In this document: one piece after another, positions 154-23,141 of the stretch
Position numbering within the stretch: position 1 is the first letter of the stretch
Layout: every line of letters begins with the position of its first letter
IMG/VR virus record: IMGVR_UViG_3300005859_000281
Span: 1 to 23,694 of that record
DNA length: 23,694 bases
Reading direction: 5' to 3' (one strand)
The notes under the pieces: model-generated
Databases searched by the model: none
What the model saw: only the letters and a program-made list of their open reading frames with translations
What the model was told of the DNA's origin: nothing
Translations under genes and position numbers: made by a program

Positions 154-1113
154 CTAAGCTAAGATAATCCTATTTAATATATTATTTAATTTCAACCTCG
201 GAAAGTCAGCCAAGTATCTTGGCGATATTTTATTTAACATTTCGTTGTGCTGATACACGATACTTAGCATGAAATTTGCTATGTCTAATTCTAATAAGCC
301 TGGAGAATAGCTTCTGTCCCCGCCATATCTCGAATAGATAGACATTGGGGATTCATTTACAAGCCCAGATATATTTTTGACAATAAATTTATGTAAATCG
401 AATATATTATTCATGTTGCGTATTAATTCTTTATAACTTGCCTTATCCAGGGTATACGCATTATGAGATTTTAAGAAATTAATAATGTATAATCCTAACC
501 CCGTAGTCGTATACTTTCTCTTCTTCCCCTCGTTCAAGTTGATTTCACTGCTTAGACCCATTAACGAAAGAGGGACAAGCACATAGCGGAGATCTGTCTC
601 AACAGATAAATTATTGCAGGCGTCCCCGCACACCTCCTTCGCAAACCTTAGAATATCTTCTATTTCCGCGTTCAGCAAGGGAAGTTGAGAGTTGTAAATG
701 TAAAGGTATTCACGCAAAGTTAATTTATTTATTGGGTTGTTTAGCTTATCAATTATTTTTAGAGATTTCAAAGCGTCTGTTAATACTAAAAAGGAGAATA
801 TTGAGGCTTCCCTGACCCTGTAATATTTATCATCAATCAACTCAGCTCCTGTAAATTCCGATATTGAATTAGCATACTTGTCAGCCTTTTCCGCAAGCTT
901 ATCAAATATCTCTGGAAAACCCCAAGCAGTCAAAGTTCTAATTTTTGCTGGTACGACAAAACCGTTTTTAGCTAATTCAATAACCTTAAGCGACGTTTTC
1001 TCAGTCTTAGTGTGTTTTGGACTCGTCATGTTTACAAGATCGGCGAAGAATTCTAGCGAGTCGTTGACCACGTTTTTATCGCCTTCTTGATGAGCAATAA
1101 AATCCATAGCCAT
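154..1113 (-). CDS. Hypothetical protein (319 aa)
   Basis: Long ORF; TATA-like CTTAAAA ~30 nt upstream on the minus strand. Confidence 0.85.
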   Translation of the reverse strand: MAMDFIAHQEGDKNVVNDSLEFFADLVNMTSPKHTKTEKTSLKVIELAKNGFVVPAKIRTLTAWGFPEIFDKLAEKADKYANSISEFTGAELIDDKYYRVREASIFSFLVLTDALKSLKIIDKLNNPINKLTLREYLYIYNSQLPLLNAEIEDILRFAKEVCGDACNNLSVETDLRYVLVPLSLMGLSSEINLNEGKKRKYTTTGLGLYIINFLKSHNAYTLDKASYKELIRNMNNIFDLHKFIVKNISGLVNESPMSIYSRYGGDRSYSPGLLELDIANFMLSIVYQHNEMLNKISPRYLADFPRLKLNNILNRIILA

Positions 1114-1149: not shown

Positions 1150-1218
1150 CAACAGCTGTTTTAGGCGTCTCCAGCTCATCATTTCCAGTCTAACCAGTTG
1201 TGCAGAAAACTTAAATAC
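1150..1218 (+). promoter_or_regulatory. Two-box promoter module copy 1 (CAACAGCTGTTT, CTAACCAGTTG, BRE/TATA TTAAATA)
   Basis: Boxes at 1150-1161 and 1190-1200, TATA 1211-1217, ATG 1243. Confidence 0.75.
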
Positions 1219-1242
1219 CAGCCTTAACAATAGCTAGATACG

Positions 1243-1437
1243 ATGAATCCACAACAAATACTACAGGAAGAAATAATAAAGATGTTAGAGAAGGACTTCA
1301 GTGAACTACAGAAACTAATTGATGAGATTGTGAAAACGAAAGATAACCCTGGTTTTGACAAAAAGAAGTTGGGGGAAGCCCATTTTGCCGTACAAAAAAT
1401 CCAAATGGAACTGTACAGGTTAATTCTCACAATGTGA
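1243..1437 (+). CDS. Small helical/coiled-coil hypothetical protein (64 aa)
   Basis: ORF with its own conserved promoter and a downstream T tract. Confidence 0.75.
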   Translation: MNPQQILQEEIIKMLEKDFSELQKLIDEIVKTKDNPGFDKKKLGEAHFAVQKIQMELYRLILTM

Positions 1438-1475
1438 CCTAAAAGCTAACCCGTTTTTTATTTACTTCTTCTTTC

Positions 1476-1551
1476 AAACGGCTGTTTTAGAGTTTTAGGC
1501 TTCTCCAGCCCTTCGTTTTCCGTCTAACTAGTTGGGTAGAAGATTTAAATA
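1476..1551 (+). promoter_or_regulatory. Two-box promoter module copy 2
   Basis: AAACGGCTGTTT 1476-1487, CTAACTAGTTG 1524-1534, TTTAAATA 1544-1551; spacer visibly homologous to copy 1 (TTTTAGGC.TCTCCAGC). Confidence 0.75.
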
Positions 1552-1583
1552 CCTCGATAACGAATCATATATTGGGAGGGAAT

Positions 1584-1925
1584 ATGAAAAGACAAACAAA
1601 AGACAAAGACGAAAATAGATTGTATTTTTGTTCACTATGCGAGTTTACCGCTACAAGTTACGAAGAATTGGACGTGCATTATTCGTTAGCACATGATGAT
1701 ACGGATCTTTCATATGAATTGGAAGCAATTGTGAATAAGAAAACGAAAAAACAAAAAAGAAAAGACCTCAAAGGGAAAGCTATTGAGCAACTGTCACTGA
1801 TGGTTAAGGGAATTAGTTATAAAAATGAGTATGTCGGATGGTGTGAAACGAGATACGAATTATATAGCGAAAAAATAGGTAACAAATACATTATTGAACT
1901 TGTGCCAGGAATTACAGTTTGTTAA
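1584..1925 (+). CDS. C2H2 zinc-finger protein
   Basis: YFCSLCEFTATSYEELDVHYSLAH = CxxC-x12-HxxxxH, then a basic patch; ATG 1584 follows SD-like GGGAGGG. Confidence 0.8.
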   Translation: MKRQTKDKDENRLYFCSLCEFTATSYEELDVHYSLAHDDTDLSYELEAIVNKKTKKQKRKDLKGKAIEQLSLMVKGISYKNEYVGWCETRYELYSEKIGNKYIIELVPGITVC

Positions 1926-1949
1926 TTATTTATTTTATTTTTCCCTCCT

Positions 1950-2033
1950 AAACAGCTGTTTGAGACCTCCTTTCTTTCCTCCCCACCGCCCGCCCAACCT
2001 CGCTTTCCTAACTGGTTAGACAAAACTTAAATA
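1950..2033 (+). promoter_or_regulatory. Two-box promoter module copy 3
   Basis: AAACAGCTGTTT 1950-1961, CTAACTGGTTAG 2008-2019, TTAAATA 2027-2033. Confidence 0.75.
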
Positions 2034-2064
2034 TCTGGGTTAGCACACATATGATTGACCAAAT

Positions 2065-2628
2065 ATGTCCTCTCCACAACCACAAGTTAAGCAAACAAAT
2101 TCAAATCAAGCAAATAATAATTCATCTACTCAAACAATGTCCTGGGAGACAATATTGAAGACTTCAAGGATTGAGAGGCAACATATTGAATATGCAATAT
2201 CTCATTCTGAGGATGCACCGATGTTGCCTTATGAGTTTGTTTACAGTCAAGTTGATTCGAATATGAAAATTTTTCCCCCTACATCGATCGCTATAAGCGG
2301 GGTAGGGGGAGTAATCGGAGCCATTTTAGCAATGAAGTACGCAAAAGGTAACATAAGATTCATAACGACGAAAGAAGTTATCAATGCTGATGAGAAATCC
2401 CCGTTATTTTTATCGAACTACGCCTTAGAATTACTAAAGAAAAAATACAACGCACAAGTGATTACGTTAGAACTAAACGAATTTGAGAAAATTAAGTTAT
2501 TGTTAAGTCAAGGTGGGGTCTATATTTCTGGATTGCCGTACGAGATCACTATTCAATTTGCACAGTTAGCTGGTTTCGGCAGATTATGGCATTATTCGCC
2601 AATACAGAGAAAGTTCTATGTATTCTAG
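2065..2628 (+). CDS. Hypothetical protein (187 aa) with Q/N/S-rich N-terminus
   Basis: ORF downstream of the conserved promoter. Confidence 0.8.
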   Translation: MSSPQPQVKQTNSNQANNNSSTQTMSWETILKTSRIERQHIEYAISHSEDAPMLPYEFVYSQVDSNMKIFPPTSIAISGVGGVIGAILAMKYAKGNIRFITTKEVINADEKSPLFLSNYALELLKKKYNAQVITLELNEFEKIKLLLSQGGVYISGLPYEITIQFAQLAGFGRLWHYSPIQRKFYVF

Positions 2629-2641
2629 GTGGTGGTGACCA

Positions 2642-3373
2642 ATGAACGATCACCAACAGTTTGAGCCAGAAGTAAAGAAATTCAAATGGTTATTGCAACA
2701 AGGGTATATAACACCTACAGAAATATCGTTTTACAGTAATTTCTACGACATTGAGATGACAAGTACTGTGAATTTTGAAGGAAAGGAAATATTAACACCA
2801 CTAATAATTATAGCAAGACCCAGCAGGTTTAAAAATATCGAAAAGCAATTACCTCAAGCAGAAATTGCAGATCCATACAGCAAAAAATTCCCGCTAATTT
2901 CATTGATAAGTGTCGAAAAGTTCATTAACAGTCTGGTTAATCTGAAAATACCATACTTCTTCTTCTCGTTATTTCTACACGAGTCATACAACGATGCTCC
3001 ATCACAAGTTCACGCACTTTTGCACACACTTTTACAACTAGCAAACAGTTCAAACAAGTATGTCATAAAATATTACAACATTTTAGAAGAACCTCTGCCA
3101 GTAAGCAGTGATTTGCAAAAAATAGTATGCCATTTTAGGAAAATGCTCGGCGAGGATAGTAATTGCGACGATAATGATTGGTGGAAGTATAATCTCTGGG
3201 GCAAAAGTACTACCAATACCAGTGCAATTGACAGAAAAATGATAGAGAAATTAGCATTACAATATAACATATCGCCGATTTGTGTTCACTACGTTTTAGC
3301 ATATAACAAAAACCCGTGTCACCTTTCATCAGATACTGTGGAAAAAATAAAATCAGACCTCTCTTCTTCATAA
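2642..3373 (+). CDS. Hypothetical protein (243 aa)
   Basis: ORF preceded by SD GGTGGTGA; probably co-transcribed with 2065..2628. Confidence 0.85.
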   Translation: MNDHQQFEPEVKKFKWLLQQGYITPTEISFYSNFYDIEMTSTVNFEGKEILTPLIIIARPSRFKNIEKQLPQAEIADPYSKKFPLISLISVEKFINSLVNLKIPYFFFSLFLHESYNDAPSQVHALLHTLLQLANSSNKYVIKYYNILEEPLPVSSDLQKIVCHFRKMLGEDSNCDDNDWWKYNLWGKSTTNTSAIDRKMIEKLALQYNISPICVHYVLAYNKNPCHLSSDTVEKIKSDLSSS

Positions 3374-3382
3374 TTTTTCTCT

Positions 3383-3880
3383 CTATAGGGCATTCGTATT
3401 CTCCTTTTTCTCTCTTTTCTTCTTTATCGTTTTTGCGTCTATCGTCTCTATCCCCTCTTCTTCCAGATATTTTAGCACTGCGTCACTATCATCTATCACT
3501 GTTACCTTATCCTGATCGTATTTTTCCATGAGCTTCCTTATGGCATCCCTCTTAAACTCATGGTCTTTCCTGAAGTCCTTCTCGCCCCTCAGCACGACCT
3601 CGGTGGGCTCTATCCCTATCTCTGACAGCTGTTTGAGAGTATCTTCACGTTGTTTTTCCGAACGTCCGCTAACTACTGCTATCGCTTCTGGTTTTTTCTC
3701 TTCAATTAACTGTTGGACAAACGTGATAACTTCCCGTTTGGGCTTGTCCATGTTCATGAACCTCGGCGATTGGAAGCATTCCCAAAACATACGTTTATTT
3801 CCGTTGGCTAGCTTCTCGCATTCGTTCCACCTGGCAGAAATATCGAAAAGCGTGCCGTCCAAATCTAGGATTAACATCAC
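3383..3880 (-). CDS. HAD-superfamily phosphatase, polynucleotide kinase 3'-phosphatase-like
   Basis: Motif I DLDGTL, motif II SGR, R..D...K, motif IV IDDSD; layout like the T4 Pnkp phosphatase domain. Confidence 0.85.
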   Translation of the reverse strand: MMLILDLDGTLFDISARWNECEKLANGNKRMFWECFQSPRFMNMDKPKREVITFVQQLIEEKKPEAIAVVSGRSEKQREDTLKQLSEIGIEPTEVVLRGEKDFRKDHEFKRDAIRKLMEKYDQDKVTVIDDSDAVLKYLEEEGIETIDAKTIKKKREKKENTNAL

Positions 3881-4458
3881 TTGGCTTCACTCTCTTTTGT
3901 TTGTTTTAAACCTAGTATTGCTATTTCTCCATTCTCTTCTTTGAAGTTTACCTCCTTAGCTTTTCCCTGGCGATTATACACGAGCCAAAATACATCTACA
4001 CCATTTTCGTCTTTTCCCCATTTTAGTTTGCTACATTCCCCATCAAATTTAGTACGAAAGTAGTTTCTCGCTTCTTGGTCGTTTTCTTCTTTTTGTAGTC
4101 CGTCTAACGTCTCCGGGTCAAACGGTTCAGTAAATAGGTAGATCTTCCTATTGTTTTTCCCGTCATCAAAAATGAAATATATCCCGAATTTGGAAATGTT
4201 AAGGTGCGAATTTATCATTAAGTCGCGATGTATATTTATAAATTCATTATCCACAACAGTAGAAATATTAACAGTGGTATGACCGTCAGTTATGTCTATA
4301 CATAATAAGTTTGCGTGCGGTAAGCGTGCGTGCGTGGCTTTGTCGGGTCTGAGGTAGAAAGAGACGTATGTTACAGCTATGGTTGGTGTAGTTTCGGGTA
4401 TGAACCCGTGGACACGCACTGTGAAATACTTATCAATGCTGATTCTCGAGCTTAGCAT
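3877..4458 (-). CDS. Hypothetical protein (~193 aa)
   Basis: Start moved to ATG 4458 because TATA TTTTTTAA (4489-4482) lies ~30 nt upstream; stop overlaps the HAD gene start. Confidence 0.75.
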   Translation of the reverse strand: MLSSRISIDKYFTVRVHGFIPETTPTIAVTYVSFYLRPDKATHARLPHANLLCIDITDGHTTVNISTVVDNEFINIHRDLMINSHLNISKFGIYFIFDDGKNNRKIYLFTEPFDPETLDGLQKEENDQEARNYFRTKFDGECSKLKWGKDENGVDVFWLVYNRQGKAKEVNFKEENGEIAILGLKQTKESEAK

Positions 4459-4481
4459 GGTAAATTCTTCACGCGATACTC

Positions 4482-4549
4482 TTAAAAAAGTCGAATTAGT
4501 TCTCAAACATATGTTTAAGAAACGAGATTCGTTTTGGCTTATTTTTAAA
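4482..4549. promoter_or_regulatory. Divergent promoter pair with central palindrome TCTCAAACATATGTTTAAGA
   Basis: TATA boxes 4482-4489 (-) and 4542-4549 (+); palindrome 4501-4520. Confidence 0.7.
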
Positions 4550-4572
4550 CCTTTTTGCGACAAGTTAAACCC

Positions 4573-4866
4573 ATGAAGCCGGAGTGTAAAGTTCTTTTGA
4601 AGGCATTCGAAAATCTTTCGTCTATTGAAAGTAAATACTATGAGGAAGATTTTCCTGAAATGCTGTCATTTATGTATCTTTTGGTAAAAGGTTACTGGAG
4701 AGTTAATGAGGAGGACGGAGTAATCGAAGAAGTAAAAATACCGCCATTCACGACTATATCCCTGCTAAATACCATGAGAGCAATCACGGCAAGAATTAGG
4801 AACGGTACCACAATCGAAGAAATCATAACCGAAAAGGAACTGTGCGGAGATGTTGAGGAGGTATGA
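4573..4866 (+). CDS. Hypothetical acidic protein (~97 aa)
   Basis: ATG 4573 is 31 nt after TATA; ATGA overlap with the next gene. Confidence 0.75.
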   Translation: MKPECKVLLKAFENLSSIESKYYEEDFPEMLSFMYLLVKGYWRVNEEDGVIEEVKIPPFTTISLLNTMRAITARIRNGTTIEEIITEKELCGDVEEV

Positions 4867-5270
4867 CAACAAATTCAACCGTAATAAATGCGTTACCCCC
4901 ATTTTTCTACACCCAAGTCTTTCTTGTTGACGTTGCAGTTGGGTTCATAATCATGACCGTAATTGAGCTGTTTCTGCTAAGAAACAGTAGCTTAACCCAT
5001 CTGCGACTCGCTCTGCCGTTTCTAACGTTTTCTGTAGGGTTTACTCTAATTTCCCTATATCTTTCTCCGTACATAACGTACAACCCAGTATACACAACAC
5101 CATTCAATGTCACGTACAGGGTCACGCCTTACAGTACCGACGGTGCTGTGCTTTTATACGTCAGCTTCGCAATCCTTGGACTATCTGCAGTATACTTTAT
5201 TTACGCGTTTGCGGTCGACGTGTTGCACCTTTCTGGTGGTAGTAAAGATGATGGTTATTTCGTGCCTTAG
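4863..5270 (+). CDS. Membrane protein (~3 TM helices)
   Basis: Three hydrophobic segments; SD GAGGAGG. Confidence 0.8.
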   Translation: MTTNSTVINALPPFFYTQVFLVDVAVGFIIMTVIELFLLRNSSLTHLRLALPFLTFSVGFTLISLYLSPYITYNPVYTTPFNVTYRVTPYSTDGAVLLYVSFAILGLSAVYFIYAFAVDVLHLSGGSKDDGYFVP

Positions 5271-5293
5271 TTCGTACCTTAGGGGTAATACAC

Positions 5294-5884
5294 ATGTCCA
5301 TGAAAATATCCCTGTTTAAGAAAAAAGCGTTGCCAAGCGTCTATAAGAATTACGACGCACTATTACTTTTGCCCCCAGCCACAGTCAAAACTGATAAAAA
5401 AACGAGTATAATAGAAAAAAACGGTGTGCATGTCGCTATAATGTATTCTGAAACCAACGGTATTTCTGTGATGTTGGATTTGCCCATTGATTTCTTAAAA
5501 CTATACTATAAGATGACTACACAAGTAAACCAGGGGAATCCGAGAGATAGGATGGTCTATTTTGCCATAGTTCACATTTCTTCGCAAGCATATGCAATAC
5601 AAAGAGCAAAAGTGCAAAAAATGAATGAGAGCACTAAAAGGAAGTTTTTCATTTTCCCCAGGTGGATTTGGCTCAGCCTAGAACGAAATGACGGTGTGAC
5701 GAATTATTTCGTCATAAACAGAATTGAAGACGATAATCCTGCAAACTTCTCAAAGGAATTTGATACATTCGGTGCCGTTGGGATTACCTTCAATAATTAC
5801 TTTATTTTCGCTAGTGTGGCGAGGAAGGAGTACGTAGCTTCCATAAATAAACAAATATCCCTCGGTCTGGGGTTTGGGTCATAA
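5294..5884 (+). CDS. Hypothetical protein (196 aa)
   Basis: ORF in a coupled operon (TAATG overlap with the next gene). Confidence 0.8.
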   Translation: MSMKISLFKKKALPSVYKNYDALLLLPPATVKTDKKTSIIEKNGVHVAIMYSETNGISVMLDLPIDFLKLYYKMTTQVNQGNPRDRMVYFAIVHISSQAYAIQRAKVQKMNESTKRKFFIFPRWIWLSLERNDGVTNYFVINRIEDDNPANFSKEFDTFGAVGITFNNYFIFASVARKEYVASINKQISLGLGFGS

Positions 5885-6402
5885 TGTCTCTCTCATATTT
5901 ACAATCGCTCGTTGGGAAAAACGTGGTATTATTCAACTATCTACGTAATATATTCAAAAATAGAATATACAAAATAGTTGAAAATGGGAATGAATATACT
6001 CTTGAGGTTGATATGGGGATAGCTAGCAGGTTACAGCACAGGATCACGCACCCCGGGATTTACTTTATCACAGACGTAATGATACAAGGTACTAGCTATG
6101 TAATTTTTCTAAAAAAACAAGTCGATCTAAAGAAGTTTGCACTGGTAAGCTCGACAACAACTTCTGAATATTACATTTCCTCGTACCGTAAAATACAGTA
6201 TAAAACCGATGCGGGTGTATTCGACGCTTTAGAATTCGATACGGGAGGGTTTAAGCACCTTACGTTTAACTATAATAACTGTATTATAGCGAAAGTGAAA
6301 AGGGCTGGTCATAAGCGTATTGCGGTATGCTTAGGTGATAGTGTCGTTATACAAGATATAAACAATGTTTCGTGCAGTTGTGAGTGGTTTACGGTTGAAT
6401 GA
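5884..6402 (+). CDS. Hypothetical beta-rich protein (172 aa)
   Basis: ORF with overlapping start/stop at both ends. Confidence 0.8.
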   Translation: MSLSYLQSLVGKNVVLFNYLRNIFKNRIYKIVENGNEYTLEVDMGIASRLQHRITHPGIYFITDVMIQGTSYVIFLKKQVDLKKFALVSSTTTSEYYISSYRKIQYKTDAGVFDALEFDTGGFKHLTFNYNNCIIAKVKRAGHKRIAVCLGDSVVIQDINNVSCSCEWFTVE

Positions 6403-7067
6403 GGTGGTGGATAACGGTATATACTAAAAAAGACGAAGTCCCTTCTGCCGAGCAGTTTCAATTCATCGTGTATAAAGAGGTATGTATGGGGAACAGTAGT
6501 ATGGTGTATCCTACTTTAGCTATAGAGAGGCTGAACACTGTAATGCTTACCTATTACAGCGATGAGATAGAAGAATTGTGGAGGGAATTAGTCCTAAAAA
6601 AATATGAGAATGCCACATCTGAGGACGAGCTAAGGCAGATATTGAAAATCGGTTGTGATATAATGTTCATCGTAATGAATGCATCTGGTGACGATGTTAC
6701 GCCGTTGGTATCGAAGATACTAAATAGCACAAGAAAAAAACATCTGTTTTATGTCAACGAGGAAGGACTTGTCTCTGAAAGTACCTATCTCATAGGCGTA
6801 CTAACAAAATTCGTTAATCCCAACGGGTTTGATGTACTCACTGTGTTGAGCATATTGAAAGACGTACAAATAAGGACGGCTACTATGATTAGCAGTATTA
6901 AAGGCACGTCGCTGTATCAGACACTTGTCAGCGAATTAGCCATAGATGAAAATACTATCGAGAAGAGATGCACGGCAAAGTACTATAGAGAATGCGTAAC
7001 AGAGAAGAAAACACAATTATTGAAAGCATTGCAGTTTATCAGGATGAATATAAATATTCCGCGTTAG
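6399..7067 (+). CDS. Hypothetical protein (222 aa)
   Basis: ORF with ATGA overlap. Confidence 0.8.
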   Translation: MRWWITVYTKKDEVPSAEQFQFIVYKEVCMGNSSMVYPTLAIERLNTVMLTYYSDEIEELWRELVLKKYENATSEDELRQILKIGCDIMFIVMNASGDDVTPLVSKILNSTRKKHLFYVNEEGLVSESTYLIGVLTKFVNPNGFDVLTVLSILKDVQIRTATMISSIKGTSLYQTLVSELAIDENTIEKRCTAKYYRECVTEKKTQLLKALQFIRMNINIPR

Positions 7068-7123
7068 AGCGACAAGGGTTTTCAGTTCCAAAAGAAATTT
7101 GCGGACGAAAGATAAAATAATAC

Positions 7124-7212
7124 AAACAGCTGTTTCAAGACTTTATCCTTCCCTTTATCGCCCTCCATCACGCTACTCATTGCCTAACTGGTTAGGCAGA
7201 AAGCTTAAAATA
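7124..7212 (+). promoter_or_regulatory. Two-box promoter module copy 4
   Basis: AAACAGCTGTTT 7124-7135; inverted repeat TGCCTAAC-TG-GTTAGGCA 7181-7198; TTAAAATA 7205-7212. Confidence 0.75.
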
Positions 7213-7283
7213 CTGATGTTTGGCATAAAAATGTACTGATCAAAAATGCCAAAAGTAAAAGTTAGGTTTGAGGGGTGTGGAAA

Positions 7284-8252
7284 ATGAGAATAGATATTAC
7301 AAAAAGTGGCGGTACTTCAATTTCGTTGTACCCGTTAGATGAATATCTCTCTTATGTTCTTTTTGATGACCTGTTTTTAAGACGAGACATTATACCTACC
7401 AAAGAACTATCAGACAAGCACGACGGATCGTTAACATTAGTTAACTATAAGCCTATGGCAACATTTAGTTTTGAGAACTCGCCAGGGTATATGCCATTTA
7501 TAATTGAAGTACGTGCTCAGTCTGAGGGAGATTCCACCTCCATCGAAAACCCAGCGGGCATAGAAGTGAGTTATGGAGAAAAAACTATACACCTCAATTT
7601 AGGTAATCTCAGCAGGGTAATTAAAGCATATGATTTTGAGATTTATAAGAGGACTGTCTATGTTAGTGTAATACAAGGTGCTACAGTTAAAGATTTTATT
7701 TTTGATGTGATCATACTAGCATACAGTGGAGGATCATACGGAGGAGCCATTGACACTGAGTTCACAAATAGGTGGGAATTCGCTGAGAAAAAAATAAAAC
7801 CATTAATTCAAACGTTAGAATCCGCTATTCCTACAATCCGAGAAGGTTTTAGGATCGAATATAAGTTTTACTATTCTCGCTATAGTGACATACTCCTATA
7901 CCCATACATTTTCCTCTTCCCTAAGGGAATTGTAAATGAAATCTCGGATTTCTTGTTATCTCTATATCAACAAACTTATGGCATCATTACAAAACTGCCA
8001 CCAGAATTTACACCTAACGAAAACGTACAATCCCCTGAGTTGCAAAAATTCCTTGAAAAGTTACCGCTCGATCTTATTGCAGAAGCGGTTATAGGCACAT
8101 ACGGTTCTTCTCCTGCGATACTTTTACCGAAAGGAGACTATTCTCAATACCTCACAGGCAATGAACGTATAATCAACCTCGAAAATAGTGATGTGATAGT
8201 CTTCGGTAATCCTCGAGCTCAAGAACAACAGACTCCCGCTCCTCAACAATAG
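7284..8252 (+). CDS. Hypothetical protein, probable member of a viral paralogous family (~320 aa)
   Basis: Long ORF; SD-like GAGGGGTG before ATG 7284 (alternative GTG 7275); C-terminus similar to ORF 2..124. Confidence 0.85.
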   Translation: MRIDITKSGGTSISLYPLDEYLSYVLFDDLFLRRDIIPTKELSDKHDGSLTLVNYKPMATFSFENSPGYMPFIIEVRAQSEGDSTSIENPAGIEVSYGEKTIHLNLGNLSRVIKAYDFEIYKRTVYVSVIQGATVKDFIFDVIILAYSGGSYGGAIDTEFTNRWEFAEKKIKPLIQTLESAIPTIREGFRIEYKFYYSRYSDILLYPYIFLFPKGIVNEISDFLLSLYQQTYGIITKLPPEFTPNENVQSPELQKFLEKLPLDLIAEAVIGTYGSSPAILLPKGDYSQYLTGNERIINLENSDVIVFGNPRAQEQQTPAPQQ

Positions 8253-9014: not shown

Positions 9015-9096
9015 TTAGGTGCTCTTTAACAAACAATAAAGGAGAAATTAAACCACAAACAGAACCCTTATTAAATATTAAAACATATGTTTTTGC

Positions 9097-10455
9097 ATGG
9101 AACGTATCGAAGTAGAACTCGATGATCCTGAAATTTCAAAATATATTCAAAAATTAGGTGCAAATAACGTATATCTTGTTGGTGGCACTGTCAGGGACAT
9201 CCTGACTGGCAAGAAGCCTAAGGATTTAGATTTTGTAGTCACCGATTTCGATAAAGCGTTAAAGTTGGCAGAAGAGATGAACTTACCTATTCATGAAGAC
9301 GGCATAGATTTCGGAGTCCTTAGGATAGGAGATAAGTATGATTTTGCTTCATTGAGGAAGGAGCGATACGACACTGTTAGTAAACCTACCGTTGAGCTCG
9401 GTGCTTCTTTAGAAGAAGATGCGAGAAGGAGGGATTTTACAATTAATGACCTCTATGGCAAGATAGTAGGTATTCACGGAAATAAATTGGTAATGGAGAT
9501 CCTTGATTTCAACAACGGTTTGGAGGATCTACGTAATCATGTGTTAAGGTTTGTAGGAAACCCACAGGAGAGAATAGACGAGGATCCGCTTAGGATACTA
9601 AGGGGAATAAGGTTTAACCTTTACGGCTATAAAATGTCCCCAGACCAACTAGAAATAATGAAGAAGAACGTTGATAAGCTGGGTGGATTACCTATAGAGA
9701 GGATCAGTGATGAGATACTAAAAATACTAAAGGTTAACCCTGCGGAGGGGTTTAAACTACTCGACGAGTTCGGTCTATTAAAATATCTCTATGAAGAACA
9801 TTACGATGCATTAAAGAATACCTATCATGATAATAGGGGTGCACACCACGGCGAGAATGTTATAGAGCACACATATGAGACGTTAAAGAGGCTTAGACGC
9901 CCAGATATTGAAACGTTATTAGCAGTAATTTATCACGATGTAGGCAAACCTTATACTAGGAGCGAAAAAAACGGGAAGATAATGTTCATAGGTCATGCTA
10001 ACGAGAGTGCAGAAATTGCAAAGGAATTAATGAAGAACCTAAAGTTACCTAACAACCTGATAAAGGACGTTTCTAACCTAATAGAAATGCATATGGACTT
10101 TAATTTAGCACAGAATAACGAGAAGAACCAGGCACAATTAATTACTAAGTTAATGTCATTGTATTCTTGGAACCCTGAGAAAGCAAGAGAGATATATAAT
10201 AAACTAATAGAGCTATCTCACGCGGATACTGCAAGCGAGAATATACTTAACATGTCCGACAAGATAAAAGAGCCGATTGTAACTGGAGAAGAAATAATGA
10301 ATACTTTTGGTGTGAGCGGAAGCATATTGAAGCATTTGAAGGAGAGGGCATATACTCTACAACTCCAAGGATATGATAAAGGCGAGATACTGAAGACGTT
10401 GAAGGGTGATAACAAATTAAACGAGTTTAAGAAGGTGTTAGAAAATTGGAGCTGA
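9097..10455 (+). CDS. cca: Class II (bacterial-type) CCA tRNA nucleotidyltransferase / poly(A) polymerase family protein with HD domain
   Basis: GGTVRD..KDLDF (DxD), RKERY loop, RRDFTIN, EDPLRILRGIRF, ERISDE; HD domain EHT..YHDVGKP..GHA..HM..AD. Confidence 0.9.
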   Translation: MERIEVELDDPEISKYIQKLGANNVYLVGGTVRDILTGKKPKDLDFVVTDFDKALKLAEEMNLPIHEDGIDFGVLRIGDKYDFASLRKERYDTVSKPTVELGASLEEDARRRDFTINDLYGKIVGIHGNKLVMEILDFNNGLEDLRNHVLRFVGNPQERIDEDPLRILRGIRFNLYGYKMSPDQLEIMKKNVDKLGGLPIERISDEILKILKVNPAEGFKLLDEFGLLKYLYEEHYDALKNTYHDNRGAHHGENVIEHTYETLKRLRRPDIETLLAVIYHDVGKPYTRSEKNGKIMFIGHANESAEIAKELMKNLKLPNNLIKDVSNLIEMHMDFNLAQNNEKNQAQLITKLMSLYSWNPEKAREIYNKLIELSHADTASENILNMSDKIKEPIVTGEEIMNTFGVSGSILKHLKERAYTLQLQGYDKGEILKTLKGDNKLNEFKKVLENWS

Positions 10456-10511: not shown

Positions 10512-11153
10512 CTATTGAGGGGTATTAGGGAGGGATGTTAGGGAGAGGAAATGAGGTATTCCAAAAGGGATACAAATATTACGTATTCCGTTGCATTCGC
10601 CTATATATGCATTTATCTCTTTATTCATATCGCAGTTCTCTTTTGAAAGCTTATGGAACACTCTTCCGTTTCCGTCTAAAATCCTGTATTTATTCCCCTC
10701 TTTAACCACAATTATCCGATCCTCTGCTAGCTTGCCCCTTCTCTTACCGTAATTCTCTCCATCTTCACAAAGTTTCCTCTTTATTTCTTCATTTTTCACG
10801 ATCTCTTCAATATTCTTGTATTTATACCCTGGAAAACCTTGTATTTCAGTTGAGATTATAAGATCCTTTAACTTAACGCTACCTTCTTCCCACGTACAAG
10901 ATTCGGCAGTTATTTCTTTTGCTATGAACTTCCTCTTAAACATTAAACTAAGCCCGTAAAATAAATCATAAATCTCCTTACAGTCCTCTTCTATTCCTTT
11001 CTTATGCTCACGGCACTTTTTGACTAGCCCATCTATATTAATTATATCAGGGGTTTTATCGCGAGTTAACGATGCTAATTCGTGCAATATATAACTTTTT
11101 ACAACCTCTAATCGCGACTCTTGAGTTAAATGCTCAGGATATTTTGTTATCAT
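10512..11153 (-). CDS. ParB/Sulfiredoxin-like domain protein
   Basis: IIVVKEGNKYRILDGNGRV resembles the ParB/Srx I.V....Y.I.DGxHR signature (H replaced by G). Confidence 0.55.
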   Translation of the reverse strand: MITKYPEHLTQESRLEVVKSYILHELASLTRDKTPDIINIDGLVKKCREHKKGIEEDCKEIYDLFYGLSLMFKRKFIAKEITAESCTWEEGSVKLKDLIISTEIQGFPGYKYKNIEEIVKNEEIKRKLCEDGENYGKRRGKLAEDRIIVVKEGNKYRILDGNGRVFHKLSKENCDMNKEINAYIGECNGIRNICIPFGIPHFLSLTSLPNTPQ

Positions 11154-11310
11154 ACATTACCTTTTTGATGTTTTTGTTTAAAAAGAAAAGGTGTTTATCC
11201 ATCAACAATAAACCTCAAACAGCTGTTTATGAGAGCGGAATAGGATCTGACTTGCTTGAGCTTGCCTTACCAACAGTCAGCTTTATTTGCCGTAGTTCTA
11301 AGGGTATAAT

Positions 11311-11652
11311 ATGATTACCCAAAAAGAAATGGTTTCGGCAATTTATAATTGTGTTAAGAAACGTGAAAAACATCTTATTGAGGAAAAGTCTTTCTTAATT
11401 TCCCTCTCTGTAGGAATCCCTGCAGACGACTTTTATGAAGTCGATGAACATCTTACTTATCGCGGTTTGGCAAACGATTACGTTGCTTACTGCGAAAATT
11501 ATTTGCCTATATTAGATAAATACGACAAGAAAACGATTTTAGAGGCTTCCCTGTACATGTTTAACCTAATAAGGAGAGGAGTGCGTGGTAAATTAAACGA
11601 AAAAGCCTCAAAATTGCTCTCGGAACTTAATCTATTCCAAGGCTATTCTTAA
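11311..11652 (+). CDS. Hypothetical protein (113 aa)
   Basis: ORF with TTTATTT ~30 nt upstream and a T-rich tract downstream. Confidence 0.75.
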   Translation: MITQKEMVSAIYNCVKKREKHLIEEKSFLISLSVGIPADDFYEVDEHLTYRGLANDYVAYCENYLPILDKYDKKTILEASLYMFNLIRRGVRGKLNEKASKLLSELNLFQGYS

Positions 11653-13577: not shown

Positions 13578-14237
13578 CTACAATCTGTCGGTACTTATCG
13601 GAGTAATACCTAACGTCTGTGCTATTTCGAGTGGAGATAACATTTCCACTCTCATTTTCGATGTGCTTACTCCTGCAACTTCCATGATACTCCTTTCAAA
13701 CGCTAACAAAAGTAACACTACTAGTTTATGTGCATCATTAAGCTTAGCTATTATATCATCATAATTTGCATCGATTGATATCAAACTATGAAGCTCTGAA
13801 AACTTTTCAGACAATTCGTCAATGGAAAGACTTGAAAACCTATCAGTCAAAATCGATAATAAAATCTGGAAATTATCATCTACGTTAAATGGAGTGCCGT
13901 AGAACTGGAGAGACCCGCTCTTAAGATCTTTTGTTAAAATCAAGACGTAATTGTTTAGGATTTCTTGCACAGTTGTTATTTTGATGGCTTCTTTTTGGGT
14001 CACCTGCCTTGTCGGTATGATAGCTTTTTCCCTGATTGCTTGCCTGACCAGGTTTGGGTCAACTTTTACAATGTTTCTCTTCCCAAGTGGCGATAATTGA
14101 GGTTGTTGTTGGGTTTGTTGTATTTGTTGAAACAGTTGTGGTGGTGCAGGCGTTGTCGTGCTTGGTATTTCATAAGTGGGTTCTTGTTGCTGTTGTTGTT
14201 TTTTAGTATTGGAGTTATTGGAGTTATTTAGGCTCAT
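13578..14237 (-). CDS. Hypothetical protein with N/Q/P-rich N-terminus
   Basis: 219-aa ORF divergent from moxR; TATA 14269-14262. Confidence 0.85.
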   Translation of the reverse strand: MSLNNSNNSNTKKQQQQQEPTYEIPSTTTPAPPQLFQQIQQTQQQPQLSPLGKRNIVKVDPNLVRQAIREKAIIPTRQVTQKEAIKITTVQEILNNYVLILTKDLKSGSLQFYGTPFNVDDNFQILLSILTDRFSSLSIDELSEKFSELHSLISIDANYDDIIAKLNDAHKLVVLLLLAFERSIMEVAGVSTSKMRVEMLSPLEIAQTLGITPISTDRL

Positions 14238-14261: not shown

Positions 14262-14319
14262 TTTAAAAAGTGGGTTTTGACGTTCAAACAGGTGTTTGAG
14301 GAAACTTTTTAAGTTTCCT
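14262..14319. promoter_or_regulatory. Divergent promoter with TCAAACAGGTGTTTGA palindrome and an inverted repeat around the TATA box
   Basis: Palindrome 14284-14299; AGGAAACTT-TTT-AAGTTTCCT 14299-14319. Confidence 0.7.
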
Positions 14320-14335
14320 ACACCAGATGTTTTTT

Positions 14336-16099: not shown

Positions 16100-16106
16100 G
16101 TATCTT

Positions 16107-20865: not shown

Positions 20866-20949
20866 AAGGGGGATCGAGGTTGCTCTGAAAAGCAGGAAAT
20901 CCTCACCGCGAGGTGGGGATGCCCCGTCCGTAAGGACGGGATAGTTCAT
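20866..20949 (+). mobile_element. IS200/IS605 remnant with right-end hairpins
   Basis: Hairpins ATCCTCACC-GCGA-GGTGGGGAT and CCCGTCC-GTAA-GGACGGG followed by TAGTTCA. Confidence 0.65.
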
Positions 20950-21896
20950 GCATTACCCAATACCTCAGGGAAAGTAGGTATACCGTCCTTCACGTATTTT
21001 ATCATCATATCCGCTACATCCCACCACATGTATTTAGGTCTTATAGGTACCTCACTAACGTCGCAAGTCATGCCTTCGGCGTCGAGGGGTCTATATAAAT
21101 CCGGGTCTATCTCATAAGTACCACCTACTTTCTCCATTACGTACTTCAAAAAGTCTTCCACACTCGCTATAACACCAGTGCAGAGGATATACCTTTTCGG
21201 CTCCTCTCCTTCCATAACTTTATTGAATATCTTCACATATTCTCCCGCGTATCCCCAATCTTTTTCAGCCTTGATATTACCTAATTTCACATGCTCCTTT
21301 TCCACTAAGTTCTTAACTATTTTCATGGTCACAAACTCTTCGCCCCTCAACTCGCTCTCGTGATTAAACGTTACAAAATCATAAACCTTAAGCCCCCATA
21401 CTTTACGGTAATAAGTAGCGATATACATTAATGAAACTTTACTTATTGCGTAAGGTGTAACGGGAGCCAGCGGTGTAGAAAGGGTTTGAGGGCGTTCCAA
21501 CGGGTGACCGAATACCTCACTCGAAGCAGGTAAAAATACTTTAGTCTCAGGCGTATGTTTCCTAACAGCCTCCAATATAGCATAAGCCGAAAGCTCGTTC
21601 ACCTGAGCCGTATAGATGGGGTTATTATAGCTATACGGAACGAAGCTCATAGCACCATAATGATATATCATGTCGGGCTTTAGCTCACGTACTATGTCGA
21701 AGACGTTTTCATATTCTGTAAGGTCAGCATAGACAAATTTAGGAGATACACCAAGAATTTCAATGACAGTCCGCATCTGGTTAGTCAACCCGTCTGCTCT
21801 ATGCCTGGTTAATACATATAACTCATCTCCCTTCTTTATATGAAGGAAGGTAGAAAGACTTGAGTCCTGACCCGCACCTGTAATTAAAACCTTCAT
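20946..21896 (-). CDS. gmd: GDP-mannose 4,6-dehydratase
   Basis: ITGAGQD, ASSEVFG, YAISK (YxxxK), FNHES.LRGEEFVT.KI, LGN...KDWG, YRP. Confidence 0.9.
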   Translation of the reverse strand: MKVLITGAGQDSSLSTFLHIKKGDELYVLTRHRADGLTNQMRTVIEILGVSPKFVYADLTEYENVFDIVRELKPDMIYHYGAMSFVPYSYNNPIYTAQVNELSAYAILEAVRKHTPETKVFLPASSEVFGHPLERPQTLSTPLAPVTPYAISKVSLMYIATYYRKVWGLKVYDFVTFNHESELRGEEFVTMKIVKNLVEKEHVKLGNIKAEKDWGYAGEYVKIFNKVMEGEEPKRYILCTGVIASVEDFLKYVMEKVGGTYEIDPDLYRPLDAEGMTCDVSEVPIRPKYMWWDVADMMIKYVKDGIPTFPEVLGNA

Positions 21897-22042: not shown

Positions 22043-22063
22043 TTTTTAAACAGCTGTTTGAGA
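22043..22063 (+). promoter_or_regulatory. TATA box overlapped by the AAACAGCTGTTTGAGA palindrome
   Basis: TTTTTAAA 22043-22050, palindrome 22048-22059, ATG 22074. Confidence 0.7.
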
Positions 22064-22583: not shown

Positions 22584-22615
22584 TTAAAAATCGTTATAAT
22601 ATCAAGAATCTATTG

Positions 22616-23113: not shown

Positions 23114-23141
23114 TTAAACATGTAAAACATATGTTTTTATG

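What the first reader, a model, noticed from the sequence alone, without database searches (positions are those of the whole stretch)
1150..7212. Four-copy two-box promoter module driving small unknown genes: candidate early or anti-defence regulon
Seen: the order [AAACAGCTGTTT]-pyrimidine-rich spacer-[CTAAC-NN-GTTRG]-BRE-TTAAA(A)TA precedes ORFs 1243, 1584, 2065 and 7246/7284. The CTAAC box starts a near-constant 19-21 nt before the TATA box, while the box-to-box distance varies (40, 48, 58, 60 nt). Known: archaeal activators bind just upstream of BRE, and anti-defence genes of Sulfolobales viruses are often small single genes with shared strong promoters. Inference: these are co-regulated genes, possibly uncharacterised anti-CRISPR or host-takeover factors.
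Basis: partly seen in the sequence, partly recalled or inferred. Interest (0 to 1): 0.65.

Follow-up and report, generated by a model that had tools for sequence, protein, structure and literature searches.

The report
Shared early-type promoter cassette, monocaudavirus
Four genes of this hot-spring archaeal virus share a conserved two-palindrome promoter cassette of a kind already used in its relatives to predict anti-defence genes, and one of the two palindromes is in fact a genome-wide control site found at most of the virus's promoters.

Summary
The window is about 44% of an uncultivated relative of Sulfolobus monocaudavirus SMV4. None occurred in 300 surrogate sequences.

The cassette is conserved across SMV1/3/4-like viruses, where it precedes 38 ORFs of 15 families. 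These include an AcrIII-1 homologue (SMV4 gp61) and aCcr1-type ribbon-helix-helix (RHH) proteins. One of these, SMV3 gp63, is a published cell-division arrest factor.

Bhoobalan-Chitty et al. (2024) already listed SMV3 gp46/47/48 and SMV4 gp40/gp61 as anti-defence candidates on regulatory-sequence grounds. Three of these are orthologues of window genes, so this is a new member of a known kind.

Three corrections apply:
- Box 1 is not specific to the module. [quoted passage not shown]
- Two of the four transcription units encode homologues of virion proteins, and only two of the first genes are small.
- Early timing and anti-defence function remain untested, and no RNA data exist for this virus.

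The proteins that bind the two boxes are unknown.

The parts
1150..1161 (.). Box 1, copy 1 (CAACAGCTGTTT). It lies between the divergent gene 154-1113(-) and ORF 1243, and directly abuts the TATA-like TTTAAGCTTAAAAT of the minus-strand gene.
1190..1217 (+). Box 2, copy 1 (CTAACCAGTTGT), BRE GCAGAAAAC and TATA TTAAATA.
1243..1437 (+). Module gene 1: a 64-aa protein of the SSV1 D-63 family. The mRNA is probably leaderless. The gene is followed by a T6 terminator-like run at 1454-1459.
   Evidence: Pfam PF20940, 1.4e-17. PDB 1SKV, 8.6e-11. 57% identical to SMV3 gp48.
1476..1487 (.). Box 1, copy 2 (AAACGGCTGTTT).
1524..1551 (+). Box 2, copy 2 (CTAACTAGTTGG), BRE GTAGAAGA and TATA TTTAAATA.
1584..1925 (+). 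Module gene 2: a 113-aa C2H2 zinc-finger protein (alternative TTG start at 1572).
   Evidence: Weak Pfam C2H2 hits below the curated cut-offs. phrog_18124. 50% identical to SMV3 gp47, which is ADG.04 in PMC11065993.
1950..1961 (.). Box 1, copy 3 (exact; in context cctAAACAGCTGTTTgag). It is preceded by a T-rich run at 1927-1943.
2008..2033 (+). Box 2, copy 3 (CTAACTGGTTAG, a perfect palindrome), BRE ACAAAAC and TATA TTAAATA.
2065..3373 (+). Module genes 3a (2065-2628, 187 aa) and 3b (2642-3373, 243 aa). This two-gene unit is homologous to ATV ORF187 and ORF326a, which are annotated as virion structural proteins.
   Evidence: phrog_17386, 9e-82, and phrog_16306, 1e-93. tblastn hits to ATV, SMV3 and SMV4. 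AlphaFold2 model of low confidence with only weak Rossmann-like matches.
7124..7135 (.). Box 1, copy 4 (exact).
7184..7212 (+). Box 2, copy 4 (CTAACTGGTTAG), BRE GCAGAAAGC and TATA TTAAAATA.
   Evidence: A homologous promoter drives three unrelated genes in other contigs.
7246..8252 (+). Module gene 4: a 13-codon uORF (7246-7287) whose stop overlaps the ATG of the 322-aa ORF 7284-8252. That ORF is homologous to the N-terminal ~310 aa of SMV1a gp05 and SMV4 gp04. It is absent from the syntenic place in SMV4.
4505..4516 (.). Box 1 variant AAACATATGTTT between divergent TATA-like boxes (minus-strand gene ending near 4460, plus-strand operon 4555-7067).
14286..14297 (.). Box 1 variant AAACAGGTGTTT between the divergent promoters of 13578-14237(-) and the MoxR ATPase gene 14327-16099(+).
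22048..22059 (.). Box 1 (exact). It lies 5 nt after the TATA-like TAAATAAC and 14 nt before ATG 22074, the TATA-box1-ATG arrangement typical of SMV virion-gene promoters.
9081..9092 (.). Box 1 variant AAACATATGTTT, 4 nt before ATG 9097 (tRNA nucleotidyltransferase-like gene).
11217..11228 (.). Box 1 (exact) in the divergent intergenic region between 10512-11153(-) and 11311-11652(+).
23125..23136 (.). Box 1 variant AAACATATGTTT, 2 nt before ATG 23139 and preceded by TTTAAAC.

Best explanation
The four copies are instances of a conserved promoter cassette, roughly 90-140 bp long, found in SMV1/3/4-type monocaudaviruses (Bicaudaviridae).

Anatomy:
- The core is a near-consensus strong Sulfolobales promoter: a purine-rich BRE (GCAGAAAR) followed by TTTAAATA.
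- The BRE is directly preceded, at a fixed offset of 1-2 nt, by a 12-bp palindromic site, box 2 (CTAAC-NN-GTTRG).
- A copy of box 1 lies 30-114 nt further upstream, usually just after the T-run terminator of the preceding gene.

Inferred mechanism:
- Host TBP, TFB and RNA polymerase fire these promoters without any viral help as soon as the genome enters the cell.
- Box 2 is the regulon-specific operator for a dimeric DNA-binding protein that controls all cassette genes together. The most likely role is later shut-off, as proposed for Aca8 in rudiviruses and for Aca proteins in bacteriophages.
- Box 1 (full form CTCAAACA[GC/TA/GA]TGTTTGAG) is a separate, genome-wide operator for a second regulator. 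[quoted passage not shown] In the cassette it lies upstream, where it cannot block initiation. There it may insulate against read-through or cooperate with box 2.

Gene content: the cassette is attached to a changing set of mostly accessory genes. In relatives these include anti-CRISPR and host cell-cycle takeover factors. In this window they are a D-63-like protein, a C2H2 zinc-finger protein, an ORF187/ORF326a pair and a truncated gp05-like protein.

What is shown and what is inferred: the anatomy, the conservation and the gene content are shown. The timing, the binding proteins and the sign of regulation are inferred.
For: Conservation:
- The cassette is found only in SMV-like contigs. The module pattern gave 11 IMG/VR stretches, all with high box 1 density, and 0 hits in 185,579 GTDB genomes.
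- Of 40 distinct box 2-TATA promoters, 38 have a box 1 core within 140 nt upstream.
- Starting instead from the BRE/TATA core, 28 of 40 cores have an exact CTAACNNGTT at the same offset, and about 9 more have variants with 1-2 mismatches.
- In alignments of orthologous promoters, both boxes and the BRE/TATA are invariant islands, while the spacers and upstream contexts differ.

Gene content:
- 38 ORFs fall into 15 families.
- These include AcrIII-1/STIV_B116 and aCcr1-like RHH genes in SMV3 (gp63), SMV4 (gp58), SMV1a, L040 and L059.
- The same promoter subtype drives four unrelated genes.

Published parallel: PMC11065993 describes strong BRE + TTTAWATA promoters with shared flanking sequence as markers of early and anti-defence genes. 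It lists SMV3 gp46/47/48/62/69/71 and SMV4 gp40/gp61.

SMV2 carries the same BRE/TATA with a diverged operator, CCTTACYAGKCAGG, in the same place. This is what one expects of an operator co-evolving with a virus-encoded factor.

Box 1 is genome-wide:
- It has 10 copies in the window, 30 in SMV4, 31 in SMV3 and 27 in SMV1a, and 0 in unrelated contigs.
- About 70% of copies are intergenic in SMV3 and SMV4 (5 of 10 in the window), although 86-89% of the DNA is coding.
- The TATA-box1-ATG arrangement occurs at SMV1a gp03, 05, 06, 09, 11, 13, 14, 16 and 51.
Against: - There are no expression data for this virus, so 'early' rests on analogy.
- Box 2 lies just upstream of the BRE. That is the classical position of archaeal activators, not repressors.
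- In SMV1a the only two genes of the 'early region' reported as full-time/late (gp03 and gp11; PMC12199143) are also the only ones there with a box 2-like element upstream. This fits a positive role for box 2.
- Two of the four window units encode homologues of virion proteins.
- The right half of box 2 is less conserved than the left, so symmetric binding by a dimer is not assured.
- No binding protein has been identified. The obvious candidate, the aCcr1-like RHH, is published as binding a different motif (AGTAATACN-like). That motif, as GTAATAC, occurs in the RHH genes' own promoters downstream of the TATA box.
Confidence: 0.6

Rival explanations
1. Box 2 is an upstream activating site. A factor present throughout infection (host-encoded or carried in the virion) binds next to the BRE and recruits TFB and TBP. 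The cassette would then mark very high or sustained expression, including structural proteins, rather than an early anti-defence regulon that is later shut off.
For: - Box 2 lies immediately upstream of the BRE, the position typical of archaeal activators such as the Ara-box/XylR system (PMC7264815).
- SMV1a gp03 (major capsid protein, the most highly expressed gene at all times) and gp11 are the full-time/late exceptions in the early region. They are also the only genes there with CTAACTG(C/A)TTGGGCAGAAA upstream. The same element lies upstream of SMV4 gp02 and of the gp14 head-protein gene.
- ORF 2065, ORF 2642 and ORF 7284 are homologues of virion proteins.
Against: - The BRE/TATA is already near-consensus, so an activator seems unnecessary.
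- The cassette also drives AcrIII-1, RHH and many tiny orphan genes.
- In the capsid-gene promoters the box 2-like element lies about 60 nt from the TATA box and is imperfect in SMV1a. It may be a decayed cassette.
- The correlation rests on only two genes.
Confidence: 0.28
2. The repeats are promoter cassettes copied by recombination, with no dedicated regulators. The boxes persist because the whole cassette is young and is repeatedly exchanged, and box 1 acts mainly as a short homology patch at cassette boundaries.
For: - Homology between cassettes in different contexts begins exactly at box 1.
- One promoter subtype is attached to four unrelated genes.
- Some spacer sequence is shared between paralogous cassettes.
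Against: - The boxes stay invariant while the spacers diverge and change length, from 28 to more than 100 nt.
- Box 1 occurs about 30 times per genome at fixed positions relative to TATA boxes in promoters that are otherwise unrelated.
- SMV2 has a coherent variant operator in five promoters.
Confidence: 0.08
3. The module is a chance co-occurrence of short AT-rich motifs, or an assembly artefact of the metagenomic contig.
For: None beyond the fact that the contig comes from a metagenome.
Against: - There were 0 composite modules in 300 surrogates, against 4 observed.
- The same gene order with the same cassettes (D-63, zinc finger, ORF187) is present in L017, and in the isolates SMV3 and SMV4.
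Confidence: 0.01

Closest known systems
Virus-specific 'early / anti-defence gene (ADG) regulatory sequences' of archaeal viruses (Bhoobalan-Chitty et al., Nat Commun 2024, PMC11065993)
   Same: - Both have a strong promoter (purine-rich BRE plus TTTAWATA) embedded in a longer sequence shared by several, mostly single, genes of one genome.
- That paper applied the approach to SMV2, SMV3 and SMV4.
- SMV3 gp46, gp47 and gp48 (orthologues of window ORFs 2065, 1584 and 1243) and SMV4 gp40 and gp61 are on its list.
   Different: - This contig was not analysed there.
- In the text held here, the paper does not resolve the sequence into two palindromes, and does not note that the distal one is genome-wide.
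- No SMV promoter, and none of these gene families, was tested experimentally.
- Its SMV4 list includes gp02. The counterpart of gp02 in the same position and with the same promoter in SMV1a is gp03, the major capsid protein. Protein homology between the two was not checked.
Aca-controlled anti-CRISPR promoters (bacteriophage Aca1/Aca2; proposed Aca8 in rudiviruses)
   Same: Both combine a strong early promoter, a palindromic operator and a small DNA-binding protein encoded within the same regulon. Here that protein would be an RHH gene, which carries the cassette in SMV1a, SMV3, SMV4, L040 and L059 and lies in an ADG-type operon in SMV2.
   Different: - The operator lies upstream of the BRE rather than over the promoter.
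- The binder is unidentified.
- The RHH is published as binding a different motif.
aCcr1 and its viral homologues (ATV gp29, SMV3 gp63), RHH repressors of cdvA (PMC9976878)
   Same: - SMV3 gp63 itself is driven by the cassette.
- SMV4 gp58 is 46% identical to it.
   Different: [quoted passage not shown]
- The window itself holds no RHH gene.
SSV1 early transcripts T5/T6/Tind with F55 operator repeats; SSV1 D-63
   Same: It is a spindle-shaped Sulfolobus virus. ORF 1243 belongs to the D-63 family. [quoted passage not shown]
   Different: From my own knowledge, F55 sites are tandem direct repeats overlapping the TATA box and the TSS. This was not tested here.
Ara-box (AACATGTT) / XylR activation in Sulfolobales (PMC7264815)
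   Same: It is a palindromic upstream element with the same AACA/TGTT half-sites as box 1.
   Different: The Ara-box has no 2-nt central spacer and controls a host sugar regulon. No evidence links XylR to box 1.

Membership tests
ADG-type early regulatory sequence (PMC11065993) | Predicted strong core promoter: a purine-rich BRE directly upstream of TTTAWATA | tested here: met
   GCAGAAAAC-TTAAATA, GTAGAAGA-TTTAAATA, ACAAAAC-TTAAATA and GCAGAAAGC-TTAAAATA.
ADG-type early regulatory sequence (PMC11065993) | A longer regulatory sequence around the promoter shared by several genes of the same genome | tested here: met
   Four copies in the window, with 0 in surrogates. The consensus was built from 40 promoters in relatives.
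ADG-type early regulatory sequence (PMC11065993) | Expression immediately after infection | not testable with these tools
   No RNA run holds the sequence. The SMV1a time course exists, but gene-level tables are not held.
ADG-type early regulatory sequence (PMC11065993) | Association with known Acr or Aca genes | tested here: inconclusive
   There is none in this 44% fragment. In SMV4 the same cassette precedes AcrIII-1 (gp61) and an RHH (gp58).
Known archaeal anti-CRISPR protein families (only AcrIII-1/PF08960 has a model in the libraries searched) | Sequence membership of the window's module-driven proteins | tested here: not met
   Pfam and PHROGs give D-63, a C2H2 finger, 'virion structural protein' families and phrog_20664. 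There is no PF08960 hit or other Acr hit.
SSV1 D-63 family (PF20940) | Match above the Pfam gathering score and similarity to the solved structure | tested here: met
   ORF 1243 scores 63.9 bits against a cut-off of 27. PDB 1SKV, 8.6e-11.
ATV ORF187 / ORF326a virion structural proteins | Sequence homology | tested here: met
   56% identity to ATV gp32. phrog_17386, 9e-82, and phrog_16306, 1e-93.
ATV ORF187 / ORF326a virion structural proteins | Presence of the protein in virions | not testable with these tools
   This rests on the RefSeq and PHROG labels only. No paper could be retrieved.
Aca-type autoregulated operon | A regulator encoded in the regulon binds the palindromic operator at its own promoter | not testable with these tools
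   RHH genes carry the cassette in five viruses. Binding to box 2 is untested, and the published specificity of the RHH differs.

The most novel reading that the evidence does not exclude
Monocaudaviruses of the SMV1/3/4 type run their whole transcription programme on a two-operator code that has not been described.

- Box 1 is an 18-bp palindrome, CTCAAACA(GC/TA/GA)TGTTTGAG, present about 30 times per genome. Its 10-bp core also occurs 10 times in ATV.
- It is bound by a global virus-encoded regulator. One candidate is the tandem-RHH protein conserved in SMV1-4 (SMV1a gp50, SMV4 gp67, SMV3 gp86).
- Box 2, next to the BRE, overrides or complements this and defines the strongly and persistently expressed set: accessory or anti-defence genes plus the capsid protein.
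- The position of box 1 relative to the TATA box, and the presence or absence of box 2, would then predict the temporal class of every gene.
Probability: 0.3. Interest if true: 0.6.

Novelty: new member of a known kind. Interest (0 to 1): 0.45.

Why it matters
If the reading is right, the cassette is a practical marker for the accessory, immediately expressed genes of a whole clade of large spindle-shaped archaeal viruses. It picked out 15 gene families here, most of them uncharacterised, alongside an AcrIII-1 homologue and proven cell-cycle hijackers.

The analysis also calls for caution. The same signals precede homologues of virion proteins and, in weakened form, the major capsid gene. Promoter similarity alone therefore over-predicts anti-defence genes.

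The genome-wide box 1 operator gives a concrete and testable handle on how these viruses time their genes. Very little is known about this for Bicaudaviridae.

Tried and rejected
- **RNA evidence.** The look-up of sequencing runs found only DNA metagenome runs, with one strong holder that is probably the source sample.
- **Host use of the motifs.**
  - The module pattern gave 0 hits in the GTDB genome collection.
  - I could not obtain a Sulfolobales genome handle to count the single boxes.
  - The one remaining genome scan, with the epimerase protein, returned only a DHVE2 archaeon.
- **Is box 2 the aCcr1-box?** Rejected, because the published motif differs. A GTAATAC element matching that motif lies downstream of the TATA box in the RHH promoters instead.
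- **Is box 1 the Ara-box?** Rejected. The half-sites are the same but the spacing differs.
- **Helical phasing of the box 1 to box 2 distance.**
  - The distances cluster at 30, 38-40, 46-51 and 58-65 nt. The Rayleigh R is 0.49-0.70 near 10-10.5 bp (p about 0.001-0.003 against a uniform null).
  - R is equally high at 12-13 bp, and the promoters are not independent. I make no claim.
- **Fold of ORF 2065.** The AlphaFold2 model had mean pLDDT 59.6. Foldseek gave only weak generic Rossmann or PP-loop matches (E >= 0.003, TM 0.2-0.3). This is inconclusive.
- **Phyletic profiling for the box 1 binder.**
  - The tandem-RHH protein (SMV1a gp50) occurs in SMV1-4 but was not detected in ATV, which still has 10 box 1 cores.
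  - It is only a weak candidate.
- **Literature.** Searches for the motif sequence, and for descriptions of a conserved palindrome in SMV genomes, found nothing. The library lacks most subscription-journal papers.
- **Scope.** The large protein searches were not needed. Table 11 was the only genetic code used.

Full report
**What the window is.** The 23,694-base window is a whole IMG/VR virus record that CheckV estimates as 44% complete. It matches Sulfolobus monocaudavirus SMV4 over 59% of its length at about 88% identity, and matches SMV3 and SMV1 more weakly. These are Bicaudaviridae, large tailed spindle-shaped viruses of Sulfolobales.

Recognisable genes in the window are:
- a HAD-type polynucleotide-kinase phosphatase (3383-3880, minus strand);
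- a class II tRNA nucleotidyltransferase/poly(A) polymerase with an HD domain (9097-10455);
- the MoxR ATPase and VWA pair known from ATV tail development (14327-18467);
- an AAA ATPase (19405-20865);
- a sugar epimerase/dehydratase (20946-21896, minus strand);
- a GtrA-like membrane protein (22613-23062).

**Check of the observation.**
- Box 1 lies at 1150, 1476, 1950 and 7124. Two copies are exact and two have one mismatch.
- Box 2 lies at 1190, 1524, 2008 and 7184.
- TTAAATA or TTAAAATA begins 21, 21, 19 and 21 nt after the start of box 2.
- The box-to-box distances are 40, 48, 58 and 60 nt.
- The spacers are 64-78% pyrimidine, against 47% for the window.
- Each motif is over-represented.
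- The composite arrangement occurs four times, all on the + strand, and never in 300 Markov surrogates.
- A T-run terminator-like stretch precedes box 1 in the tandem copies (1454-1459 and 1927-1943).

AAACANNTGTTT occurs 10 times in the window, 30 times in SMV4, 31 in SMV3 and 27 in SMV1a. My estimate from base composition is roughly 0.1-0.2 per genome.
- Its full form is the 18-bp palindrome CTCAAACA(GC/TA/GA)TGTTTGAG.
- In all of IMG/VR the exact 18-mer occurs only in SMV-like contigs.
- Unrelated viral contigs of the same GC content have none.
- The strict 12-mer is rare in SMV2 (3 copies) and ATSV (2), and absent from ATV and STSV1.
- The 10-bp core AACAKMTGTT is nevertheless enriched in ATV (10 copies against 0 for the control pattern) and in SMV2 (5).
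- About 70% of copies are intergenic in SMV3 and SMV4, and 5 of 10 in the window, although 86-89% of the DNA is coding.

Box 1 appears in three placements:
1. *Downstream of a TATA box.* It starts within about 10 nt of a TATA-like box and ends 2-17 nt upstream of the start codon, so it spans roughly -17 to -6 relative to the expected TSS. Examples are SMV1a gp03 (major capsid protein), gp05, 06, 09, 11, 13, 14, 16 and 51, and window sites 22048, 9081 and 23125.
2. *Between two divergent TATA boxes.* Examples are window sites 4505, 14286 and 11217.
3. *Far upstream.* It lies 30-114 nt upstream of box 2 in the cassette.

**The cassette in relatives.**
- A scan of IMG/VR for box 2 plus BRE/TATA returned 11 stretches, all SMV-like.
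- With SMV1a, SMV3, SMV4 and further contigs I collected 40 non-identical box 2-TATA promoters. Of these, 38 have a box 1 core within 140 nt upstream, although box 1 was not part of that search pattern.
- Starting instead from the BRE/TATA core alone, 28 of 40 cores have an exact CTAACNNGTT ending 1-2 nt before the BRE. About nine more have variants with one or two mismatches at the same offset.
- The left half-site is more conserved than the right.
- In alignments of orthologous promoters, the boxes and the BRE/TATA are invariant islands. The spacers vary in sequence and length, and the upstream contexts are unrelated. Homology begins at box 1.
- SMV2 has the same BRE/TATA preceded by a coherent variant operator, CCTTACYAGKCAGG, at five genes: gp37, gp39, gp41, gp51 and gp52. 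The retrieved supplement text lists gp39, gp41, gp51 and gp52 as ADGs, and a figure legend treats gp37 under 'ADGs in SMV2'.
- The module pattern is absent from 185,579 prokaryotic species genomes.

**Which genes it drives.** Across the set, 38 cassette-driven ORFs fall into 15 families.
- D-63-like proteins occur in 9 contigs. SMV4 gp40 and a homologue in contig L013 (145-147 aa) cluster with them.
- ORF187-like proteins occur in 7.
- C2H2 zinc-finger proteins occur in 3.
- aCcr1-type RHH proteins are found in SMV3 (gp63), SMV4 (gp58, 46% identical), an unannotated gene in SMV1a, L040, and a tandem-RHH in L059.
- A family that includes SMV3 gp69 has 3 members.
- SMV4 gp61 is AcrIII-1/STIV_B116-like (PF08960, 6e-18).
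- SMV3 gp62 is a ZapB-like coiled coil.
- The rest are several orphans.

SMV3 gp63 was shown experimentally to arrest cell division when expressed in S. islandicus (PMC9976878). The promoter subtype of window copy 4 is 72% identical over about 145 nt to promoters that drive three unrelated genes in other contigs. The cassette is therefore a portable promoter for accessory genes.

**The window's own four units.**
- *ORF 1243 (64 aa).* It is an SSV1 D-63 family protein (PF20940, 1.4e-17; PDB 1SKV, 8.6e-11). It is 57% identical to SMV3 gp48, which PMC11065993 labels 'ADa' (ADG.67).
- *ORF 1584 (113 aa).* It is a C2H2 zinc-finger protein, 50% identical to SMV3 gp47, which is ADG.04.
- *ORF 2065 and ORF 2642.* These are homologues of ATV ORF187 and ORF326a, which RefSeq and PHROGs call virion structural proteins. 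SMV3 gp46 is ADG.71 in the same paper. An AlphaFold2 model of ORF 2065 was of low confidence (pLDDT 59.6) and gave only weak Rossmann-like matches.
- *ORF 7284 (322 aa).* It matches the N-terminal ~310 residues of a ~750-aa protein (SMV1a gp05, SMV4 gp04; phrog_20664). PMC12199143 reports this protein as abundant in virions and expressed early. It is missing from the syntenic site of SMV4.

None of the four matches a known Acr family.

**Relation to published work.** Bhoobalan-Chitty et al. (PMC11065993) showed that SIRV2 early genes share a regulatory sequence built around a strong BRE + TTTAWATA promoter. These early genes include acrID1, acrIIIB1 and aca8. The authors proposed shut-off by Aca8 and used per-virus MEME motifs to predict anti-defence genes in many viruses, among them SMV2, SMV3 and SMV4.

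Their lists contain SMV4 gp40, gp61 and gp02, and SMV3 gp46, 47, 48, 62, 69 and 71. My scan finds the cassette at all of these except SMV4 gp02 and SMV3 gp71, which carry variant forms (box 2 far upstream at gp02; ATAACctGTTAGG at gp71). None of these SMV families has been tested experimentally.

One caution follows. SMV4 gp02 (ADG.73) occupies the same position, and has the same promoter architecture, as SMV1a gp03. PMC12199143 identifies gp03 as the major capsid protein and the most highly expressed gene throughout infection. I did not compare the two proteins directly.

**How it probably works.**

*Shown:* the anatomy, the conservation, the fixed offset of box 2 from the BRE, the genome-wide use of box 1 and the gene content.

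*Inferred:*
- The near-consensus BRE/TATA lets host TBP, TFB and RNA polymerase transcribe these genes at once after entry.
- Box 2 is the site of a regulon-wide regulator.
- Box 1 is the site of a second, global regulator.

The sign of box 2 regulation is open.
- *For repression (Aca-like shut-off):* the strong core promoter, the published model, and the fact that an RHH gene is itself under the cassette in five viruses. In SMV1a the RHH gene carries the only box 2 in the genome.
- *For activation:* the position just upstream of the BRE. In addition, the two 'full-time/late' genes inside SMV1a's early region (gp03 and gp11) are the only ones there with a box 2-like element upstream.

For box 1, the TATA-box1-ATG genes gp05, 06 and 09 are 'early'. 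The MoxR/VWA operon (gp24-gp23), where box 1 lies upstream of the TATA box, is 'full-time/late'. This fits a repressor that acts only where box 1 overlaps the initiation region. The sample is small.

Candidate binding proteins, all unproven, are:
- the aCcr1-like RHH. Its published target differs, and a matching GTAATAC lies downstream of the TATA box in its own promoters;
- a tandem-RHH protein conserved in SMV1-4;
- the C2H2 zinc-finger protein;
- a host factor.

**Limits.**
- No RNA run holds this virus, so neither timing nor TSS could be checked.
- Host genomes could not be scanned for the single boxes.
- An apparent ~10-bp periodicity in the box 1 to box 2 distance is not separable from simple clustering.
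- Read laying, complex prediction and the large protein searches were not used.

**Verdict.** This is a real, conserved, co-regulated promoter family whose members in relatives include anti-CRISPR and host-takeover genes. The idea is already published for SMV2-4, box 1 is not module-specific, two of the four units encode homologues of virion proteins, and nothing shows that the window's genes are anti-defence factors. The feature is a new member of a known kind. The genome-wide box 1 operator and the combinatorial arrangement of the two boxes are the parts that appear undescribed and are worth testing.

Noticed in passing
L022 (SMV1a, PQ221053.1) 38603-38894: The annotated 'gp40' (38603-38872, + strand, GTG start, low complexity) lies antisense to an unannotated 67-aa RHH gene (38626-38829, minus strand; Pfam RHH_1, 1.3e-07). 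That RHH gene carries the only box 2/BRE/TATA cassette of the genome. 'gp40' is probably a mis-call.
   Followed up: partly
SMV3 (L020) about 49745-49790; L022 about 38835-38875; L040 about 3085-3125; L059 about 9735-9770: [quoted passage not shown] This matches the published aCcr1-box consensus and suggests the RHH autoregulates through that site rather than through box 2. SMV4 gp58 lacks a clear copy (there is an N in the sequence).
   Followed up: partly
L064 (SMV2, NC_029020.1) upstream of gp37, gp39, gp41, gp51 and gp52: SMV2 has the same BRE/TATA (GCAGAAAGCTTAAATATC) preceded by a different near-palindrome, CCTTACYAGKCAGG, where SMV1/3/4 have box 2. [quoted passage not shown]
   Followed up: partly
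SMV1a (L022) upstream of gp03 (627) and gp11 (15775); SMV4 656 and 15720: Capsid-gene promoters have the reverse order of elements: a box 2-like CTAACTG(G/C/A)TTGGGC(A/T)GAAA about 60 nt upstream of the TATA box, then the TATA box, then box 1, then the ATG. SMV4 gp02, listed as anti-defence candidate ADG.73, occupies the same position and has the same promoter architecture as SMV1a gp03, the major capsid protein. Protein homology between the two was not checked.
   Followed up: partly
window 3383-3880 (-) and 9097-10455 (+): The virus encodes a HAD-type PNKP phosphatase domain protein and a class II tRNA nucleotidyltransferase/poly(A) polymerase with an HD domain. The latter is 91% identical at DNA level to ATSV. 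Together they look like an RNA or tRNA repair set, possibly a counter to host RNases.
   Followed up: no
window 16107-18467: The 786-aa VWA-domain ORF lies in a stretch with extreme strand composition (AT skew about 0.46-0.49, GC skew 0.25-0.47). It contains long lysine/glutamate/glutamine-rich low-complexity sequence.
   Followed up: no
window 7246-7287: A 13-codon uORF (MPKVKVRFEGCGK) ends in an ATGA overlap with the start codon of ORF 7284. This suggests translational coupling downstream of cassette 4.
   Followed up: no
window 6738-6749; SMV4 31428; SMV1a 31644: A box 1 copy (AAACATCTGTTT) lies inside the coding sequence of ORF 6399-7067 and is conserved at the same place in SMV4 and SMV1a. 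It may be an internal regulatory site or simply conserved coding sequence.
   Followed up: no
L022 44918-45238 (SMV1a gp50); SMV4 51090-51389; SMV3 63702-64010; SMV2 50282-50590: A roughly 106-aa protein appears to have two RHH repeats in one chain. Pfam detects only the C-terminal one; the N-terminal one was seen by eye. It is conserved in SMV1-4 and was not detected in other phage or archaeal virus records. It is a candidate binder of the genome-wide box 1.
   Followed up: partly
window 2065-2628: The ORF187-like 'virion structural protein' has an invariant GxGGxxG motif (ISGVGGVIGA) within a predicted beta-alpha-beta core. This suggests a nucleotide-binding Rossmann-like domain rather than a typical capsid fold. 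The model confidence was too low to decide.
   Followed up: partly
window 154-1113 (-) versus SMV4 gp41 and gp42: The 319-aa gene divergent from cassette 1 appears to correspond, by position and size, to two adjacent ORFs in SMV4 (gp42 and gp41). It would be either fused here or split there. It has no family match, and no protein comparison was run.
   Followed up: no
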